DNA of 63,842 nucleotides, filler included, from Octopus bimaculoides (Eukaryota): NCBI RefSeq assembly GCF_001194135.2. It is 6 parts of 6 records of this genome, joined end to end, with 100 filler letters (N's around TTAATTAATTAA, not from the genome) between each part and the next. Parts side by side here need not be neighbours in the genome. Positions count along the whole stretch, not along the records: positions 49,573 to 57,106 come from NC_069000.1; 5 more parts are not named here. The stretch is one strand, 5' to 3'. The notes under the pieces were generated by a model, which did no database searches, was not told the origin of the DNA, and saw nothing but the letters and a program-made list of their open reading frames with translations. Shown piece by piece: positions 49,573 to 57,208 of the stretch. Each line of letters starts with the position of its first letter. Positions within the stretch are counted from its first letter, which is position 1. A program made the translations under genes and the position numbers.

Positions 49573-49631
<59 letters not shown>

Positions 49632-50519
49632 TACACACATGTGCATATGATGATAATGGATCTTTGGTATTTGTGAATGAGGCTTCAGTTATTCTATTGA
49701 GTGAAATATCTGCTCTTGAATTTACCCGTAAGTAGTTGAGCATTCCAAAAACACCTGTACCCTTAACACAATGTGCTGGCCAAATCAGTAGAATACAATG
49801 CTATGCATTTTGAAGTGTTATGTTTTGAATTCTCCACCCATTATGGTGCCTCCCCCTCCTCTCATGTGTTATGCCTGCCACTTCTCCCTCTGCTGCAGTG
49901 TCGAAGACTACCCATCAATATCATATCTCACTTGCCCTTCCCTATCCACTCAGTAATTGTATCAATTTTAAAAACACCTGGTGCATATCATCCACCAACT
50001 GACCACAACTCATGTGCATCCCTCTCTCTTCCCCAGTTCATGGTCCTTGCCTCATCCACCCTACAACTCCACCCAATTTGGCAGTTCGCCTCCCACCCTT
50101 CATTCATCTTCCCATACAATCTAGCAAACCCCTCATCCACCCTCTTGTGCTCAGTTTGTGCCTTGTGAGGCAACCTGAGCATTTTATCTACACACACACA
50201 CATATATATATATCAAACCGTCCAACCCATGCCAGCATGAAAGGCAGACATTAAACGATGATGAAAATGATGCTGGTGTGTTGACAACTGATGCTGGTGT
50301 GTTGACAACTGATGTTGGTGTATTTACATCCCCGTAATTTAGTGGTTTGGCAAAACAGATCGATAGAATAAGTAGTAGGCTTACAAAGAATAAGCCCTGA
50401 GGTCAATTTACTCAACTAAAGGCGGTGCTCCAGCATGGCCACAGTCAATGACTGAAACAAGTAAAGAGTTTAACAAAAAATTATTCATAAAGGATTTAAT
50501 GGGAAACAATAATATATTG

Positions 50520-51530
50520 GAATGAGAAATGAAAATAATCATGGGATTATGATATCATACAACTCCTAGTGTTTGATGTATGATCCTCCACATGCAATAA
50601 CCTTCCTTACGTGTTAATCCATTGAATTTGTCGAGGTGATGATACCTTCTTGTGTCATGCTTTGAGCAGCAACTACAATAGAATCCCAGAGAGCAACTTT
50701 ACTTGAAAACTGCAGTCCATCTTGGTAAATGTGCCTCTTCAGGACACTCCACAGGTTCTTGATTGGTTTTTAAGTCAAGGAAACAAGGTGACCACTCCAT
50801 CAAATGACCTCCAGAGAAGCCTGTTTGCTGCAGATATTCCTTAAAATTCTTTGCTGCATGAGATGGGGCATTAATTTGCATGAAAACCAGCTTTCTCTTG
50901 AATGGAAGTTTTTTACTTTTTGAACCACGGTTGGAAATTGTCCTTTCAGGAGGTAACATGTGTTTTCGACGTCATCTTAAATGTCATCTGGGACTTTCCA
51001 TGGCCTGACCATCATACCACCAAAACATGACCTGATTTCCCCACTGTTGGTGTCTCAACCAATGAGGATAGTTCCCGCTGATTGATACCCAACCTTTACT
51101 CCTGCCATCTGGTCCATTAAGAGAAGCATGACATTTGTCAGTGAACAGAACTGTTGAAAAAATCTATCTTAATGTATTCTTCTGCCCATTTCAATCTTTT
51201 CTGCTCAGAGGGGGCCTTGTAACAGGTTTAACATTCCTGGCTGCCTGCTTCAACAGGCGACACTTGGTAATTTTTGGTACGTCTTCCCTGCCACAATGTT
51301 TGAAGACTTCTCTACTTGTCAGGCATGGCTTCTACACAACTTCCCTTTTCACATGTGACAAAATTCGATTCAAAGCAACCCTCGACTTACCTTGTCTGCC
51401 CTCAACCGAAATAGGAGACTGTGCAAATTTCTTCACTGTTCAGTGATCTTTTCCAAGTATTTTTGATATTTCCTTTTCGAAGCTCTGACACGACAGTAGA
51501 CTTCTCATTCGACAAGATACTGGTCTATGG
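50520..51530 (-). mobile_element. Decayed Tc1-family transposase
   Basis: LKWAEEY, VLFTDKCHASLNGPDG..GW, FMQINAPSHAAK, LMEWSPCFLDL; TIRs not identified. Confidence 0.75.
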
Positions 51531-51543
51531 CAGGATTACGTAA

Positions 51544-51574
<31 letters not shown>

Positions 51575-51826
51575 TGTATGTATGTATGTATGCATGCATG
51601 TATGTATGTATGTATGTATGTATGTATGTATGTATGTATGTATGCATGCATGTTTGTGCATAGCCATAATTCAAAAAAGAGTCACTATCTTTTTCTTCTA
51701 CAACTGCCAACTCTGATGAATGCAGGGCTACAGATATGTTATCTAACATGCAGTTGAACATCCAGTGTGAAACAGCTTGCTAAGATTGGGCATAATGGAT
51801 ATATTATACTGTACACTTCAATTATT

Positions 51827-51904
<78 letters not shown>

Positions 51905-52425
51905 AAGAGAGAGAGAGATATGACAGATAGACAGGCTAATAAACAGAAAAGATGGTGTGTGTGTGAGAGAGAGAGAGAACTACATTGTCCAATGTTCCCT
52001 TCTATTTTTAAGAGGGTAGTGTATAATTTTAGTCAATTGGACTGACTGCTATTTTGAGCAGGTTGAGTAATGACTTAAAACTTGCCTTACTAGCTTGTTT
52101 CTTCTCTTGTTATAGTTGTTGTTCTCATTGCTGCTGCTGCTGCAGTTGTTGTTACTGACATCCAGATAAGAGAGATGAATGATGAAGAAAGGTGCCAAAC
52201 ACCCTCATTTAGCAAATAAGATGAAATATAGAATGTAAAAGTGAAGAATAGTAGCAGCAGTAGTAGCAGTAGCAGCAGCAGTAGCAGTAGCAGCAGCAGT
52301 TATGTGTTAGAGATATGGGATGTGGATAATAAATCTTTCTCCGAACTCAACTTTTCCAATCTTGTTGAAACAAACAACTGCATTAGTATTCAATCTGGTG
52401 ATCCACTATTTCAAACCCTCCCCCA

Positions 52426-52439
52426 TAATAATAATAATA

Positions 52440-52503
<64 letters not shown>

Positions 52504-52554
52504 GTAATAATAATAATAATAGTAGTAACAACAACAATAACAACAACAACAACC

Positions 52555-52585
<31 letters not shown>

Positions 52586-52615
52586 TATTATTATTATTAT
52601 TATGATGACTATTAT
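52426..52615. repeat. (AAT)n(AAC)n(ATT)n compound microsatellite
   Basis: Direct reading; immediately precedes the SINE cluster. Confidence 0.95.
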
Positions 52616-53716
52616 TAAGGTGATGAGCTGGCAGAAACGTTAGCATGCCGGACAAAATGCTGCTAAGTATTTTGTCCGTCCTTATGTTCTGAGTTCAAAT
52701 TCTGCCGAGGTAGACTTTGCCTTTCATCCTTTCGCGGTCACTAAATTAAGTACAAGTTGAACACTGATGTTGATGTAATCGACTATCCCTTTTCCCACGA
52801 ATTTCAGGTCTTGTGCCTATAATAGAAAAGATTATTATTATTTAAGGCAGCAAACTGCCAGAATTGTTTGCATGCCAGACAAAATGCTTACTGGCATTTC
52901 TTTCGGTATTATGCTTTGAGTTCCATCAAGGTCAACTTGACGTTTCGTCCTTTCAGAGTTCACGACATAAGTTCAATTTGAACACTGGGGTTGATGTAAC
53001 TGACTAACCTTGTGCCAAAATCAGAAATAATAATCATTATTTCTATGAAGGTGGTGAGCTGGCAGAATGCTTAGTGGTATTTCATCTGCCATTATGTTCT
53101 GAGTTCAAATTCCGCCGAGGTCGACTTTACCTTTCATTCTTTTGGGGTCGATAAATTAAGTACCATTTGTGCTCTGGGGTCAATGTAATCAACTTAATCT
53201 CTTTGTCTGTCCTTGTTTGTCCCCTCTGTGTTTAGCCACTTGTGGGCAATAAAGAAATAAGATACATTAGCATGCAGGACAAGATGCTTAGTGGCATTTC
53301 TTTTAGATTTATGCTTAGAGTTCAAATTCCATCAAGGGTCGACTTTGTCTTTCATCCTTTTGGGATTGATGAAATAAATACAATTTGGACAATTTGGACA
53401 TGGGCTTATGGCATAGTGGTTAAGAGAAGAGCGCAGGCTACTAACCTCAAGATTCTGAGTTCGATTCCAGGCAGTGACCTAAATTATTATAATAATAATA
53501 ATAATAATAATAGTAACGGGCGAAATGCTTAGTGGTATTTTGTCTGCCATTACATTCTGAGTTCAAATTCCGCCGAGACCGACTTTGCCTTTCATCCTTT
53601 CGGGGTCGATAAATTAAGTACCAGTTATGCACTGGGGTCGATGTAATCGACTTAATCCCTTTGTCTGTCCTTGTTTGTCCCCTCTATGTTTAGCCCCTTG
53701 TGGGCAATAAAGAAAT
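52616..53716 (+). mobile_element. Head-to-tail cluster of five family C SINEs plus one tRNA-like head
   Basis: Copies at about 52616-52835, 52842-53030, 53048-53261, 53265-53385, 53517-53716, each with GAGTTCAAATTC B-box and GTCGACTTTGCCTTTCATCC core; tRNA-like piece at 53402-53480. Confidence 0.85.
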
Positions 53717-53782
53717 GATAATAATAATAATAACAACGAAAAATACCTTAGGAATGAGAACCCAGGTTCGAAATTTCCTCAA

Positions 53783-53828
53783 GACACCTGATGAAGGCTG
53801 GAGAGTATATCAGCTGAAACGTTGTGTT
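53783..53828 (+). ncRNA. Second copy of the same minimal hammerhead (element about 53735-53890)
   Basis: Same layout; stem II GGCUG/CAGCU (G-U closing pair). Confidence 0.65.
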
Positions 53829-54026
53829 AACAACAAACAAGATGAGAACAAATATCCGTCAAATGTAAATAAGGTAATTAATGTAAATAATATATATATA
53901 TATATATATGTATATAAGTACATGCATACGTATATATGTATCTATATAGCTAGAGAGCTAGCTATATAGATAAGCATATATATATATAATATGCATGTAC
54001 ATGTTTATAAAAAATTGTACACACAC

Positions 54027-54068
<42 letters not shown>

Positions 54069-54365
54069 GAATTGAAAGAGAGATAGATAGACAGACAAAC
54101 AGAAAGATAGATAAATAAACAGATAGCTATATGTCACAAGACCACTAGAACTTACTAACTAATTACTATCTAGCTCAATAATTCTAATGTCATTAAAACC
54201 TTTGATGTAATAAATAAAAATGAATAAATAAAATTTCCATATAAATCTAATTAAATACCATAAAAAGTTACTGAATATCAAACCAAACCACAAAAGAAGC
54301 AATAAGACTACTCAGACTTGTACTAGAAAACAGAGAATCCTTAAAACAGCAAAATGTATATACAC

Positions 54366-54403
<38 letters not shown>

Positions 54404-54629
54404 NNNNNNNNNNNNNNNNNNNNNNNNNNNNNNNNNNNNNNNNNNNNNNNNNNNNNNNNNNNNNNNNNNNNNNNNNNNNNNNNNNNNNNNNNNNNNNNNN
54501 NNNNNNNNNNNNNNNNNNNNNNNNNNNNNNNNNNNNNNNNNNNNNNNNNNNNNNNNNNNNNNNNNNNNNNNNNNNNNNNNNNNNNNNNNNNNNNNNNNNN
54601 NNNNNNNNNNNNNNNNNNNNNNNNNNNNN

Positions 54630-54671
<42 letters not shown>

Positions 54672-55192
54672 CATATATATATATATGTATATATATTCTT
54701 TTATTCCCTTACTGGTTTCAGCCAGAGGCTGGGGCCATGCTGGAGCACTACCTTTCAGCATTTTAGGGTCTCTGTTTTTGGTGAAGAAGCAAGTTAGACA
54801 GAGTTACCCTTCTTTGTGCTTCCTGCTACGATGTGGGTTCATCTGGGATTGCAGATATCTTAGTTTCCTTGGAAGGATGTTATACAGTTCTGGTCCTCTG
54901 AAACCCAAGCTGCTGCAATACTGCAATATATATATAATGGACTTCCACACAGTTTCTGTCTACCAAACTCACTCACAAGAAGGTACAAGCCCAAGGTGCT
55001 CTGTACTGGGACTGAACTCAAAAACTAACTACTTGCAAATCACACTGATTATTAATCATACTACGAGTAAATTAACTCTTTTAACTTATCTCTTGAAATT
55101 AAAATTGAAGGATGTGGAAGGTGTGGTAGAAGGTACTAGATACTGAGGGAAAAAAAGGGTAAAATATGTAATTATGTAAATTATAAAAGGCC

Positions 55193-55241
<49 letters not shown>

Positions 55242-56287
55242 TGTGTGTGTAAGTGTTTGTGTGTATGTGTTTAGATTACTCAATAAACATGCCGAAAGAA
55301 GGAAAAAAAATTTAACAAATTAATCTAAAAAATAACATGAAATGCTAAGCAAATGAATAAATATTTATGCATATGTTTATTTGTGCAGGTGAGGTGAAGT
55401 GGGATTATGAAGGCTGGTTATATATAACTTGAAGATTTGCCAATACAAGTGCTTTAAATTGCCTCTGGCAGTTGAAAAATGCTGGAGGGCTTTCAAAGGT
55501 TTACTTANNNNNNNNNNNNNNNNNNNNNNNNNNNNNNNNNNNNNNNNNNNNNNNNNNNNNNNNNNNNNNNNNNNNNNNNNNNNNNNNNNNNNNNNNNNNN
55601 NNNNNNNNNNNNNNNNNNNNNNNNNNNNNNNNNNNNNNNNNNNNNNNNNNNNNNNNNNNNNNNNNNNNNNNNNNNNNNNNNNNNNNNNNNNNNNNNNNNN
55701 NNNNNNNNNNNNNNNNNNNNNNNNNNNNNNNNNNNNNNNNNNNNNNNNNNNNNNNNNNNNNNNNNNNNNNNNNNNNNNNNNNNNNNNNNNNNNNNNNNNN
55801 NNNNNNNNNNNNNNNNNNNNNNNNNNNNNNNNNNNNNNNNNNNNNNNNNNNNNNNNNNNNNNNNNNNNNNNNNNNNNNNNNNNNNNNNNNNNNNNNNNNN
55901 NNNNNNNNNNNNNNNNNNNNNNNNNNNNNNNNNNNNNNNNNNNNNNNNNNNNNNNNNNNNNNNNNNNNNNNNNNNNNNNNNNNNNNNNNNNNNNNNNNNN
56001 NNNNNNNNNNNNNNNNNNNNNNNNNNNNNNNNNNNNNNNNNNNNNNNNNNNNNNNNNNNNNNNNNNNNNNNNNNNNNNNNNNNNNNNNNNNNNNNNNNNN
56101 NNNNNNNNNNNNNNNNNNNNNNNNNNNNNNNNNNNNNNNNNNNNNNNNNNNNNNNNNNNNNNNNNNNNNNNNNNNNNNNNNNNNNNNNNNNNNNNNNNNN
56201 NNNNNNNNNNNNNNNNNNNNNNNNNNNNNNNNNNNNNGTGTGTGTGTACCTATACATGTGCATACACACATACACATACATATATGT

Positions 56288-56600
56288 ATCATCATCATCA
56301 TCACCATCATCATTGTTTAACGTTCGCTTTCCATGCTAGCATGGGTTGGACGATTTAACTGAGGACTGGCGAACCAGATGGCTACACCAGGCTCCAATCT
56401 GATCTGGCAATGTTTCTACAGCTGGATGCCCTTCCTAACGCCAACCATTCCGAGAGTGTAGTGGTTGCTCTTACGTGCCACCAGCATGAGGGTCAGTCAG
56501 GCTGTACTGGCAACAGCCATGCACAAAATGGTATTTTTTACATGCCACCTGCACAGGAGCCAGTCCAGCAGCACTGGCAACAACCTCGCTCGAATGATTT
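56288..56600 (-). mobile_element. Retroposon family E 3' part with (GAT)n tail (RTE-like)
   Basis: CCAACCCATGCTAGCATGGAAAGCGAACGTTAAAC plus (GAT)n; same tail at 50213-50267 (+). Confidence 0.65.
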
Positions 56601-56702
56601 TCTAACGTTTACAATTAAGTGTAATCAGCAGAATCACATGCGCGTTCACCACCAGTGGGGAACAACTTGTATGAGATTCTGAAAATTATATTTACCTTAC
56701 AG

Positions 56703-56729
56703 TTCGTGCTGACGAGAAACATATTTTCA
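56703..56729 (+). other. Candidate 27-nt symmetric microexon
   Basis: TTTACCTTACAG|27 nt|GTAAGA; open in phase 0 (FVLTRNIFS) and phase 1 (xRADEKHIFx). Confidence 0.25.
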
Positions 56730-57208
56730 GTAAGAGAATATTAATTTCAAAACTATAGTTCACGGATAATTTATATTTATGTAATTTTCACTGTCTTGCC
56801 CACATACGTTTTGGTACTTCGCTGAATTTCATTTGAGAACAATTAGGTCTTAGCAGACACATTACATGTGATCTTCTTCTAGCACATTAACAGTCCACCT
56901 AGTGGTCTTCTTTATATATACACACATATATATATATATATATATATAATTAACAACAGGCTGGAGATTGGCAATCAATATGTTATTTAGCCACATCTGG
57001 ACGTGTGTAGGTTCATTCTTAATAACATGCTCATGTATTGTTTATAACAAAAAAAAAAAAAGAGAGAAGCTGCACGTATAACACATAACTTAGAAGCAGC
57101 GCTACANNNNNNNNNNNNNNNNNNNNNNNNNNNNNNNNNNNNNNNNNNNNTTAATTAATTAANNNNNNNNNNNNNNNNNNNNNNNNNNNNNNNNNNNNNN
57201 NNNNNNTA

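What the first reader, a model, noticed from the sequence alone, without database searches (positions are those of the whole stretch)
53200..53716. A SINE subfamily whose 3' tail matches the Tx1/L1 LINE 3' end (tail swap)
Seen: copies 3 and 5 of the cluster end in TTTGTCCCCTCT(G/A)TGTTTAGCC(A/C)CTTGTGGGCAATAAAGAAA; the Tx1-type LINE ends (minus strand, 35803-35762) in TTTGTCCCCTCTGTGTTTGGCCCTGAGTGGCTAATAAAGAAA: 35/42 identical for each, with differences concentrated in a small GCC/GGC-type hairpin before AATAAA. Other family C copies have an unrelated tail plus (ATT)n. Established: SINE-LINE tail sharing is typical for CR1/L2/RTE partners, whereas mammalian L1 needs only poly(A). Inference: one SINE body has switched between two LINE machineries, one of them an L1/Tx1-clade element with stringent tail recognition.
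Basis: partly seen in the sequence, partly recalled or inferred. Interest (0 to 1): 0.72.

Follow-up and report, generated by a model that had tools for sequence, protein, structure and literature searches.

The report
Octopus-type SINE subfamily with replaced tail
Two copies of a short mobile element share a body with their neighbours but carry a different 3' end, an ordinary case of SINE tail exchange; the claimed partner, an L1/Tx1-type LINE, could not be checked.

Summary
The 42-nt tail TTTGTCCCCTCT(G/A)TGTTTAGCC(A/C)CTTGTGGGCAATAAAGAAA occurs exactly twice, at 53216-53257 and 53674-53715. It ends two SINE copies (about 53048-53257 and 53518-53717) with different flanks and different 5' ends. 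Copy 5 has an 18/20 target-site duplication.

These copies lie in a head-to-tail pile of five related SINE copies plus one unrelated tRNA-like SINE, all inside A/T trinucleotide repeats. Body identities group copies 3 and 5 together (88%), with copy 1 as their nearest relative (76-81%). Copy 1 and the more distant copy 2 carry the other tail. So tail B looks like a derived 3' module, and a tail swap within the SINE family is supported.

The tails are not clearly unrelated: both end in a 4-bp stem around an invariant CTTGT loop, followed by an A-rich end. Three of the four stem pairs differ on both sides between the tail types. That suggests related LINE 3' ends rather than two foreign machineries.

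The LINE lies outside my piece, and no octopus LINE sequence was reachable, so the Tx1/L1 claim is untested. SINE tail exchange is well documented.

The parts
52617..52843 (+). SINE copy 1. Full length, long head (AAGGTGATGAGCTGGCAGAAACGTTAGCATGCCGGACAAAATGC...), tail A, then (ATT)4 at 52831-52843.
   Evidence: B-box-like AGTTCAAATTC at 52692.
52806..52818 (+). Tail A terminal hairpin AGGT-CTTGT-GCCT, followed by ATAATAGAAAAG.
   Evidence: Fold. Pair counts.
52844..53047 (+). SINE copy 2. Divergent body lineage, shortened tail A (CTTGTGCCAAAATCAGAAA) plus a mixed AAT/ATT run.
53048..53266 (+). SINE copy 3. Full length with a short head: it lacks the 21-nt segment between the direct repeats GCTGGCAGAA and GCCGGACAAA. 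Tail B, then TAAGATACA. No clear target-site duplication.
53205..53257 (+). Tail B module in copy 3 (53 nt): a T/C-rich tract with a 10-nt tandem duplication (53203-53222), the hairpin GCCA-CTTGT-GGGC at 53235-53247, AATAAA at 53248-53253, and GAAA.
53267..53400 (+). SINE copy 4. Truncated at both the 5' and 3' ends; same body lineage as copy 2.
53400..53517 (+). Unrelated tRNA-like simple SINE (A box TGGCATAGTGG, B box AGTTCGATTCC) with an (ATT)2(ATA)n tail. Copy 5 inserted into that tail.
   Evidence: Not called as a tRNA by ARAGORN or Rfam.
53518..53717 (+). SINE copy 5. 5'-truncated, tail B.
53663..53715 (+). Tail B module in copy 5: 10-nt tandem duplication at 53661-53680, hairpin GCCC-CTTGT-GGGC at 53693-53705, AATAAA at 53706-53711, and GAAA.
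53498..53517 (+). 5' copy of the target-site duplication of copy 5: ATAATAATAATAATAGTAAC.
   Evidence: Read. It matches 53718-53737 at 18 of 20 positions, including the non-repeat end.
53718..53737 (+). 3' copy of the target-site duplication of copy 5: ATAATAATAATAATAACAAC.
   Evidence: Read.

Best explanation
The feature is two independent retrotransposed copies (copy 3 and copy 5) of a derived subfamily of a SINE with tRNA-type promoter boxes. The genome is probably octopod.

The subfamily keeps the family's head and body. From the breakpoint ...ATCCCTTT onward, the ancestral 3' module (tail A) is replaced by a 53-nt module (tail B). Tail B consists of a T/C-rich tract with a 10-nt duplication, a small G+C hairpin with a CUUGU loop, AAUAAA, and a short A-rich end.

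Proposed mechanism:
1. RNA polymerase III transcribes the element from its internal A and B boxes.
2. The ORF2 protein of a 'stringent' LINE binds the 3' hairpin and end.
3. That protein nicks A/T-rich trinucleotide repeats and reverse-transcribes the SINE in place. This target-primed reverse transcription produces target-site duplications and occasional 5' truncation.

The new tail most likely arose by template switching or recombination at the short shared CCCTTT stretch, with the donor being a LINE (or a LINE-tailed element). Both tails keep the same stem/loop/A-rich architecture, with compensatory stem changes. The donor LINE is therefore most likely a relative of the old partner, not a member of an unrelated clade.

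Shown: the two copies, their shared derived module, the independence of the two insertions, the duplication flanking copy 5, the family relationships and the hairpin pair pattern.
Inferred: that the tail comes from a LINE, that the hairpin is what is recognised, how the swap happened, and which LINE is the partner.
For: - The exact 42-mer occurs twice against 0 expected.
- Copies 3 and 5 are 90% identical over 198 nt and 95.5% over the tail.
- The two copies have different flanks and different 5' ends. An 18/20 duplication flanks copy 5.
- Body identities: c3/c5 88%, c1 against c3/c5 76-81%, c1 against c2/c4 64-68%, c2/c4 74%. Tail A is present on both c1 and c2.
- c1 is 77-81% identical to c3/c5 over the shared body, but past the breakpoint the two tails align only weakly and with a long gap. 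This fits module replacement better than gradual drift.
- Hairpin: 89.5% of cells are paired and 3 of 4 pairs changed on both sides. Only 1 of 500 shuffles reaches this, and slid controls give 21-47% paired (on MAFFT alignment A2).
- Tail A's GGY-CTTGT-GCC plus A-rich end recurs on two other SINE bodies in O. vulgaris transcripts, so it behaves as a conserved functional module.
- B-box-like motif is exact in copies 1, 3, 4 and 5. The A-box motif is a 9/11 match in copies 3-5, but at that stringency the motif is no commoner than in shuffles.
- Literature: SINE tail exchange and multiple LINE partners for one body are established (PMC3747384 Table 1; PMC5786205; PMC11481361). According to the abstract listed, ORF2 proteins of stringent LINEs recognise their own 3' tail RNA (PMC4176376).
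Against: - Only two tail-B copies were seen, both in one cluster, so amplification is not demonstrated.
- No LINE sequence was seen, so the LINE origin of either tail is an inference.
- The hairpin is thermodynamically weak (z -1.4 and -0.2 for the 26-nt context). A competing longer-range fold, UUGUCC with GGGCAA, is the minimum-energy structure.
- The covariation rests on five sequences, effectively one A-versus-B contrast. The structure was also derived from the same sequences.
- Copy 3 has an A-G mismatch in the stem and no clear target-site duplication.
- In 400 kb of O. vulgaris transcripts, tail B appears only as a single 14-mer hit.
- ARAGORN and Rfam do not recognise the head as a tRNA.
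Confidence: 0.6

Rival explanations
1. Tail B is the 3' end of an L1/Tx1-clade LINE that recognises its template stringently. The SINE body therefore moved from one LINE machinery (the tail A, (ATT)n type) to an unrelated one.
For: - Tail B ends in AATAAA plus a short A/G/T-interrupted A-rich run, which resembles L1-type ends.
- The terminal repeats differ. Tail A copies lie in (ATT)n, while copy 5 lies in (TAA)n in the sense orientation.
The mismatches cluster in the hairpin block, as expected for a distinct source sequence rather than random decay.
- L1-clade LINEs with conserved 3' hairpins shared with SINEs exist in plants and algae (PMC3472496; PMC3747384 Table 1).
Against: - The LINE is outside my piece, and no octopus LINE could be retrieved.
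- The Tx1 assignment was made by eye.
- Tails A and B share hairpin architecture with compensatory changes. This argues for related partners rather than unrelated machineries.
- Other partners are plausible. A full-length Dong (R4 clade) element and RTE elements, the O. vulgaris one with a microsatellite right after its ORF, are reported in octopus (PMC9115989). From memory, Dong targets TAA repeats.
Confidence: 0.2
2. The LINE match seen by the reader is stacking, not shared ancestry. A severely 5'-truncated tail-B SINE fragment, or the tail of another SINE, inserted into the A/T-repeat tail of a LINE copy.
For: This locus shows six SINE units chained head to tail inside A/T trinucleotide repeats. 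Two of them are 5'-truncated (copies 4 and 5), and copy 5 sits inside the tail of another SINE. Adjacency of a tail fragment to another retroelement's end is therefore common here.
Against: That looks like a distinct variant rather than a decayed SINE copy. Truncation to about 42 nt is extreme.
Confidence: 0.25
3. No swap took place. Tail B is tail A after an internal 10-nt duplication, an insertion and point changes, and the same LINE still moves it.
For: - The tails align weakly but above chance in two of three tests.
- They share CCCTTT at the junction, an invariant CTTGTG, the same stem positions and an A-rich end.
- Tail B contains a 10-nt tandem duplication.
Against: - Past the breakpoint the tails align only weakly and with a roughly 16-nt gap, while the bodies are 77-81% identical.
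- Three stem pairs changed on both sides, which needs six coordinated substitutions within 13 nt.
- The terminal repeats differ in strand: (ATT)n against (TAA)n.
Confidence: 0.12
4. Copies 3 and 5 are products of a local segmental duplication, not of two transposition events.
For: They lie only 458 bp apart, in the same orientation.
Against: - Sequence on both sides differs.
- Copy 3 has the full 5' head and copy 5 is 5'-truncated.
- Copy 5 has its own flanking duplication inside another SINE's tail.
Confidence: 0.03

Closest known systems
CORE-SINEs with alternative LINE tails: MIR/L2, MIR3 (Ther-2)/L3, Mar-1/RTE-3_MD (PMC3747384 Table 1)
   Same: One tRNA-promoter head and body carries different LINE-derived 3' modules in different subfamilies.
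   Different: A CORE domain was not tested in this family. Partners are unknown. Here the two tails look related to each other.
Mollusc 'mosaic' SINEs: bivalve HCD-tRNA SINEs that use at least four LINE clades (PMC11481361), gastropod/bivalve jigsaw SINEs (PMC4758252), and cephalopod IdioSINE2 tail replacement (PMC5786205)
   Same: Same phylum, same module shuffling. Homologous tails occur on different bodies; here tail A is on three bodies.
   Different: Those partnerships were shown against LINE consensus sequences. Here no LINE was available.
L1-clade stringent pairs: ZmSINE2/ZmSINE3 with LINE1-1_ZM, and SINEX-3_CR with L1-1_CR (PMC3472496; PMC3747384)
   Different: Those cases are in plants and green algae and end in (T)n or (A)n. 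An animal Tx1-group case is not in that list. L1/Tx1 membership is untested here.
Eel UnaSINE1/UnaL2 and zebrafish ZfL2-1/ZfL2-2 (PMC3747384; PMC4176376)
   Same: A small 3' stem-loop followed by a short terminal sequence, in LINEs of the stringent type. For the two related zebrafish LINEs, ORF2 proteins are reported to recognise their own 3' tail RNA. This is a model for tails A and B.
   Different: Vertebrate L2 clade, with different loop and terminal repeats. Binding is untested here.
Octopus SINEs OK, OR1 and OR2 (Ohshima and Okada 1994; OR1/OR2 classed as CORE-SINEs in PMC4824008 and PMC5804259)
   Same: Octopod tRNA-derived SINEs. An element I take (from memory) to be OR2-like is also present in the piece.

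Membership tests
tRNA-derived SINE | Internal RNA polymerase III A and B boxes at tRNA-like spacing | tested here: inconclusive
   The B-box-like motif AGTTCAAATTC is exact to the relaxed consensus in copies 1, 3, 4 and 5. The A-box ATGCTTAGTGG is a 9/11 match in copies 3-5, but at that stringency the motif is no commoner than in shuffles. A-to-B spacing is 35 nt.
tRNA-derived SINE | Head recognisable as a tRNA | tested here: not met
   ARAGORN found no tRNA. The Rfam tRNA model gave no hit even at E up to 10.
tRNA-derived SINE | Short, non-coding, repeated, with target-site duplications | tested here: met
   There are five copies of 130-230 nt. Relatives occur in O. vulgaris transcripts. Copy 5 has an 18/20 duplication. 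No duplication was found for copy 3.
SINE/LINE pair of the stringent type | SINE 3' end homologous to the 3' end of a LINE consensus | not testable with these tools
No octopus LINE sequence was reachable.
SINE/LINE pair of the stringent type | Conserved 3' stem-loop kept by compensatory changes | tested here: inconclusive
   89.5% of cells paired, 3 of 4 pairs changed on both sides, and 1 of 500 shuffles reaches this. However, there are only five sequences, the fold energy is weak, and a competing fold exists.
L1/Tx1-clade partner | Tail continuous with an ORF2 (APE endonuclease plus RT) that groups with L1/Tx1 | not testable with these tools
   No LINE ORF lies in the piece; the ORF lists show only a degenerate DDE-transposase remnant, and no external LINE was retrieved.
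CORE-SINE superfamily (includes octopus OR1/OR2) | CORE central domain | not tested
   No CORE consensus is available in the tools. A resemblance to a conserved SINE domain, recalled from memory, is only a lead.

The most novel reading that the evidence does not exclude
An octopod L1/Tx1-group LINE recognises its own 3' hairpin stringently, inserts into (TAA)n repeats, and has captured a tRNA-SINE lineage by tail exchange. This would be the first animal example of a stringent L1-clade SINE/LINE pair. It would also coexist with a second, related hairpin class (tail A) in the same genome.
Probability: 0.15. Interest if true: 0.5.

Novelty: new member of a known kind. Interest (0 to 1): 0.27.

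Why it matters
If the partner really is an L1/Tx1-group LINE, it would extend to animals the idea that the ancestral L1 clade recognised its 3' end specifically and that mammalian L1 later relaxed this. So far that idea rests on plant and algal pairs.

Two tail classes with the same loop but flipped stems would also give a natural system for asking what a LINE reverse transcriptase reads: loop, stem sequence or shape.

As it stands, the locus is an ordinary illustration of SINE module shuffling and of insertion into microsatellite tails.

Tried and rejected
Attempts to reach more sequence from this genome, or a LINE:
1. Exact look-up of a 131-aa window ORF found nothing.
2. A protein search with the antisense ORF that covers tail B found no candidates.
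3. A search with the stitched DDE-transposase remnant gave one Logan protein on a 910-bp contig, with no SINE or LINE.
4. A six-frame chimeric query of copies 1, 3 and 5 produced 7828 word candidates, none scoring E <= 10.
5. Tail pattern scans of metagenome and prokaryote genome collections gave one chance hit in a bacterial-looking contig and nothing else. A SINE-core scan found nothing.
6. I searched the 400 kb of O. vulgaris transcriptome text held for PMC9115989 for tail-B, tail-A and reader-typed LINE-end k-mers. Results: one tail-B 14-mer, two tail-A SINEs, and no LINE end.
7. SINEBase supplements are not held.
8. A full-text search for the SINE and tail strings found nothing relevant.

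Also tried:
- Rfam and ARAGORN for a tRNA-like head: negative.
- A search for further tail-B-like sequence in the piece: none beyond the two copies.

Rejected: segmental duplication as the origin of copies 3 and 5, because the flanks and 5' ends differ. A suspected shared module between this family and the second SINE type in the piece was only marginal (9 of 500 shuffles) and is not claimed.

Full report
**What is in the piece**

The piece 49573-57106 is rich in microsatellites, interrupted by runs of N, and full of short retroposon-like repeats. Between 52617 and 53737 six SINE units lie head to tail on the + strand, all embedded in A/T trinucleotide repeats:
- Copy 1 (52617-52843): full length.
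- Copy 2 (52844-53047).
- Copy 3 (53048-53266): full length.
- Copy 4 (53267-53400): truncated at both ends.
- An unrelated tRNA-like simple SINE (53400-53517), with perfect A and B boxes and an (ATT)2(ATA)n tail.
- Copy 5 (53518-53717): 5'-truncated and inserted into that tail.

**Check of the observation**

Shuffles expect 0. No other tail-B-like sequence exists in the piece. Copies 3 and 5 are 90% identical over 198 nt and 95.5% over the last 67 nt.

They are independent insertions rather than a local duplication. Their flanks differ. Copy 3 has the full 5' head while copy 5 starts inside the head. Copy 5 is also flanked by ATAATAATAATAATAGTAAC (53498-53517) and ATAATAATAATAATAACAAC (53718-53737), which match at 18 of 20 positions including the non-repeat end. 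I found no clear duplication for copy 3.

That string remains unverified.

**Family structure**

Over the shared body the identities are as follows (on alignment A1):

| Comparison | Identity |
|---|---|
| c3 vs c5 | 88% |
| c1 vs c3/c5 | 76-81% |
| c1 vs c2/c4 | 64-68% |
| c2 vs c4 | 74% |

Tail A (...CCCACGAATTTCAGGTCTTGTGCCTATAATAGAAAAG plus (ATT)n) is carried by c1 and, in shortened form, by c2. So it sits on two body lineages. Tail B is carried only by the c3/c5 lineage. Tail B is therefore the derived state.

Homology between c1 and c3/c5 runs through ...GATGTAATCGACT(T)A(A)TCCCTTT. Past that point the two tails align only weakly and with a gap of about 16 nt, although the bodies are 77-81% identical. 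This sharp change fits replacement of a 3' module better than gradual drift.

**Are the tails unrelated?**

Not clearly. Global alignments of tail A against tail B beat shuffles in two of three tests (p about 0.005, 0.15 and 0.01).

The shared architecture is more telling. Both tails end in a 4-bp stem around an invariant CTTGT, followed by an A-rich stretch:
- Tail A: AGGT-CTTGT-GCCT-ATAATAGAAAAG.
- Tail B: GCC(C/A)-CTTGT-GGGC-AATAAAGAAA.

Two O. vulgaris transcripts held as text carry related SINEs with tail A on different bodies: comp3391 with GGC-CTTGT-GCC-TAAATTAAAAAC, and comp3785 with GGT-CTTGT-GCC-TATGTTAAAAAC. So tail A behaves as a conserved, portable module.

On the MAFFT alignment of these five sequences (A2), the four stem pairs are formed in 89.5% of cells. 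Three of the four pairs differ on both sides between the A and B types. One of 500 column shuffles reaches the observed values. Sliding the 3' partner by 1-3 columns drops pairing to 21-47%.

Several caveats apply. There are only five sequences, effectively a single A-versus-B contrast, and the structure was derived from the same sequences. The small hairpin is thermodynamically weak (z -1.4 and -0.2). In the 71-nt context a longer-range pairing, UUGUCC with GGGCAA, is the minimum-energy fold.

With those caveats, the simplest reading is that both tails are versions of one kind of LINE 3' recognition end. For zebrafish ZfL2-1 and ZfL2-2, two related stringent LINEs, ORF2 proteins are reported to recognise their own 3' tail RNA (PMC4176376, abstract). 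That gives a precedent for two related LINE partners. A single shared partner is also possible.

**Points in favour of distinct partners**

The terminal repeats differ. Tail A copies are followed by (ATT)n. Copy 5 lies in (TAA)n in the sense orientation. Tail B continues as AATAAAGAAATAAGA in copy 3, and also in the single O. vulgaris hit: comp3727 begins GGGCAATAAAGAAATAAGAAATATT, identical to copy 3 over 19 nt. The sample is two against two.

**The LINE partner**

I could not obtain any LINE sequence from this genome.
- The protein collection holds essentially no repeat-derived ORFs from it.
- The DNA collections that can be scanned are prokaryotic, viral or metagenomic; scans of the prokaryote-genome and metagenome collections gave only a chance hit.

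The Tx1/L1 assignment therefore stays untested. Alternatives are real. A full-length Dong (R4 clade) element and RTE elements, the O. vulgaris one with a microsatellite beginning at the end of its ORF, are described in octopus (PMC9115989). From memory, Dong is specific for TAA repeats.

This locus shows how readily elements stack into each other's A/T-repeat tails, and how often copies are 5'-truncated. Against it, the clustering of mismatches in the typed string looks like a distinct variant rather than decay.

**Comparison with what is known**

- One SINE body with different LINE tails is textbook. Examples are the CORE-SINEs with L2, L3 or RTE tails (PMC3747384 Table 1), 'occasional tail exchange' including cephalopod IdioSINE2 (PMC5786205), and bivalve SINEs that use at least four LINE clades, with homologous tails shared across superfamilies (PMC11481361).
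- L1-clade LINEs with a conserved 3' hairpin shared with SINEs are known in maize, sorghum and Chlamydomonas (PMC3472496). That list has no animal L1/Tx1 pair.
- The family may be one of the octopus SINEs described in 1994 (OK, OR1, OR2). I had no consensus to test this.
- The head has B-box and A-box-like motifs but is not recognised as a tRNA.

**Verdict**

The sequence observation is real, and a tail replacement within the SINE family is supported. The claim that the other tail is unrelated is weakened. The claim that tail B belongs to an L1/Tx1 LINE cannot be judged here. The phenomenon is a new member of a known kind, of modest interest unless the L1/Tx1 partnership is confirmed genome-wide.

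Noticed in passing
53400-53517: A separate tRNA-like simple SINE. It has a perfect A box (TGGCATAGTGG at 53409) and B box (AGTTCGATTCC at 53458), 49 nt apart, followed directly by (ATT)2(ATA)n. ARAGORN and Rfam do not call it a tRNA. Copy 5 is inserted into its tail.
   Followed up: partly
50420-50480 (+) and 54697-54757 (-): Two copies of the 3' end of another SINE-like repeat, which from memory I take to be OR2-like. Its own terminal hairpin differs by a change on both sides: CAGTC-AAT-GACTG against CAGCC-TCT-GGCTG. Both are followed by GAAAC(A/C)AGTAA. Terminal hairpins seem to be a general feature of SINE ends in this genome.
   Followed up: partly
50540-51500 (-): A degenerate transposase remnant with stops and frameshifts. 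It is 68% identical to a Logan protein (P0001) that has a weak DDE_3 match below Pfam's cut-off. It is probably a Tc1/mariner-type pseudogene.
   Followed up: partly
52633-52656 compared with 53060-53068: Head length polymorphism. Copies 1 and 2 carry about 21 nt between the direct repeats GCTGGCAGAA and GCCGGACAAA, and 5'-truncated copy 4 begins inside it. Copy 3 lacks the segment. It is either a deletion between the repeats or a duplication in the long form.
   Followed up: no
56296-56370 (+) and 50190-50270 (-): A shared 50-nt module, TCATCAT(T/C)GTTTAA(C/T)GT..GC.TT.CATGCT.GCATGGGTTGGACG. It starts another abundant repeat but is followed by different sequence at the two sites.
   Followed up: partly
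53620-53711 (+), frame of copy 5 +2: A sense reading frame runs open through tail B and stops at the TAA inside AATAAA (...NPFVCPCLSPLCLAPCGQ*). This could be chance in a T/C-rich tract, or a hint that the tail derives from the very end of a LINE ORF with a minimal 3' UTR. The six-frame protein search found nothing.
   Followed up: partly
53203-53222 and 53661-53680: A 10-nt tandem duplication (TTGTCTGTCC TTGTTTGTCC) lies inside tail B in both copies, so it was already present in their source element.
   Followed up: no
53740-53880: Just downstream of copy 5's duplication lies a stretch with a B-box-like CCCAGGTTCGAAATT. It is possibly a fragment of yet another tRNA-related element.
   Followed up: no
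50268-50328: A 21-nt unit (TGATGCTGGTGTGTTGACAAC) is repeated 2.9 times inside the presumed OR2-like repeat.
   Followed up: no
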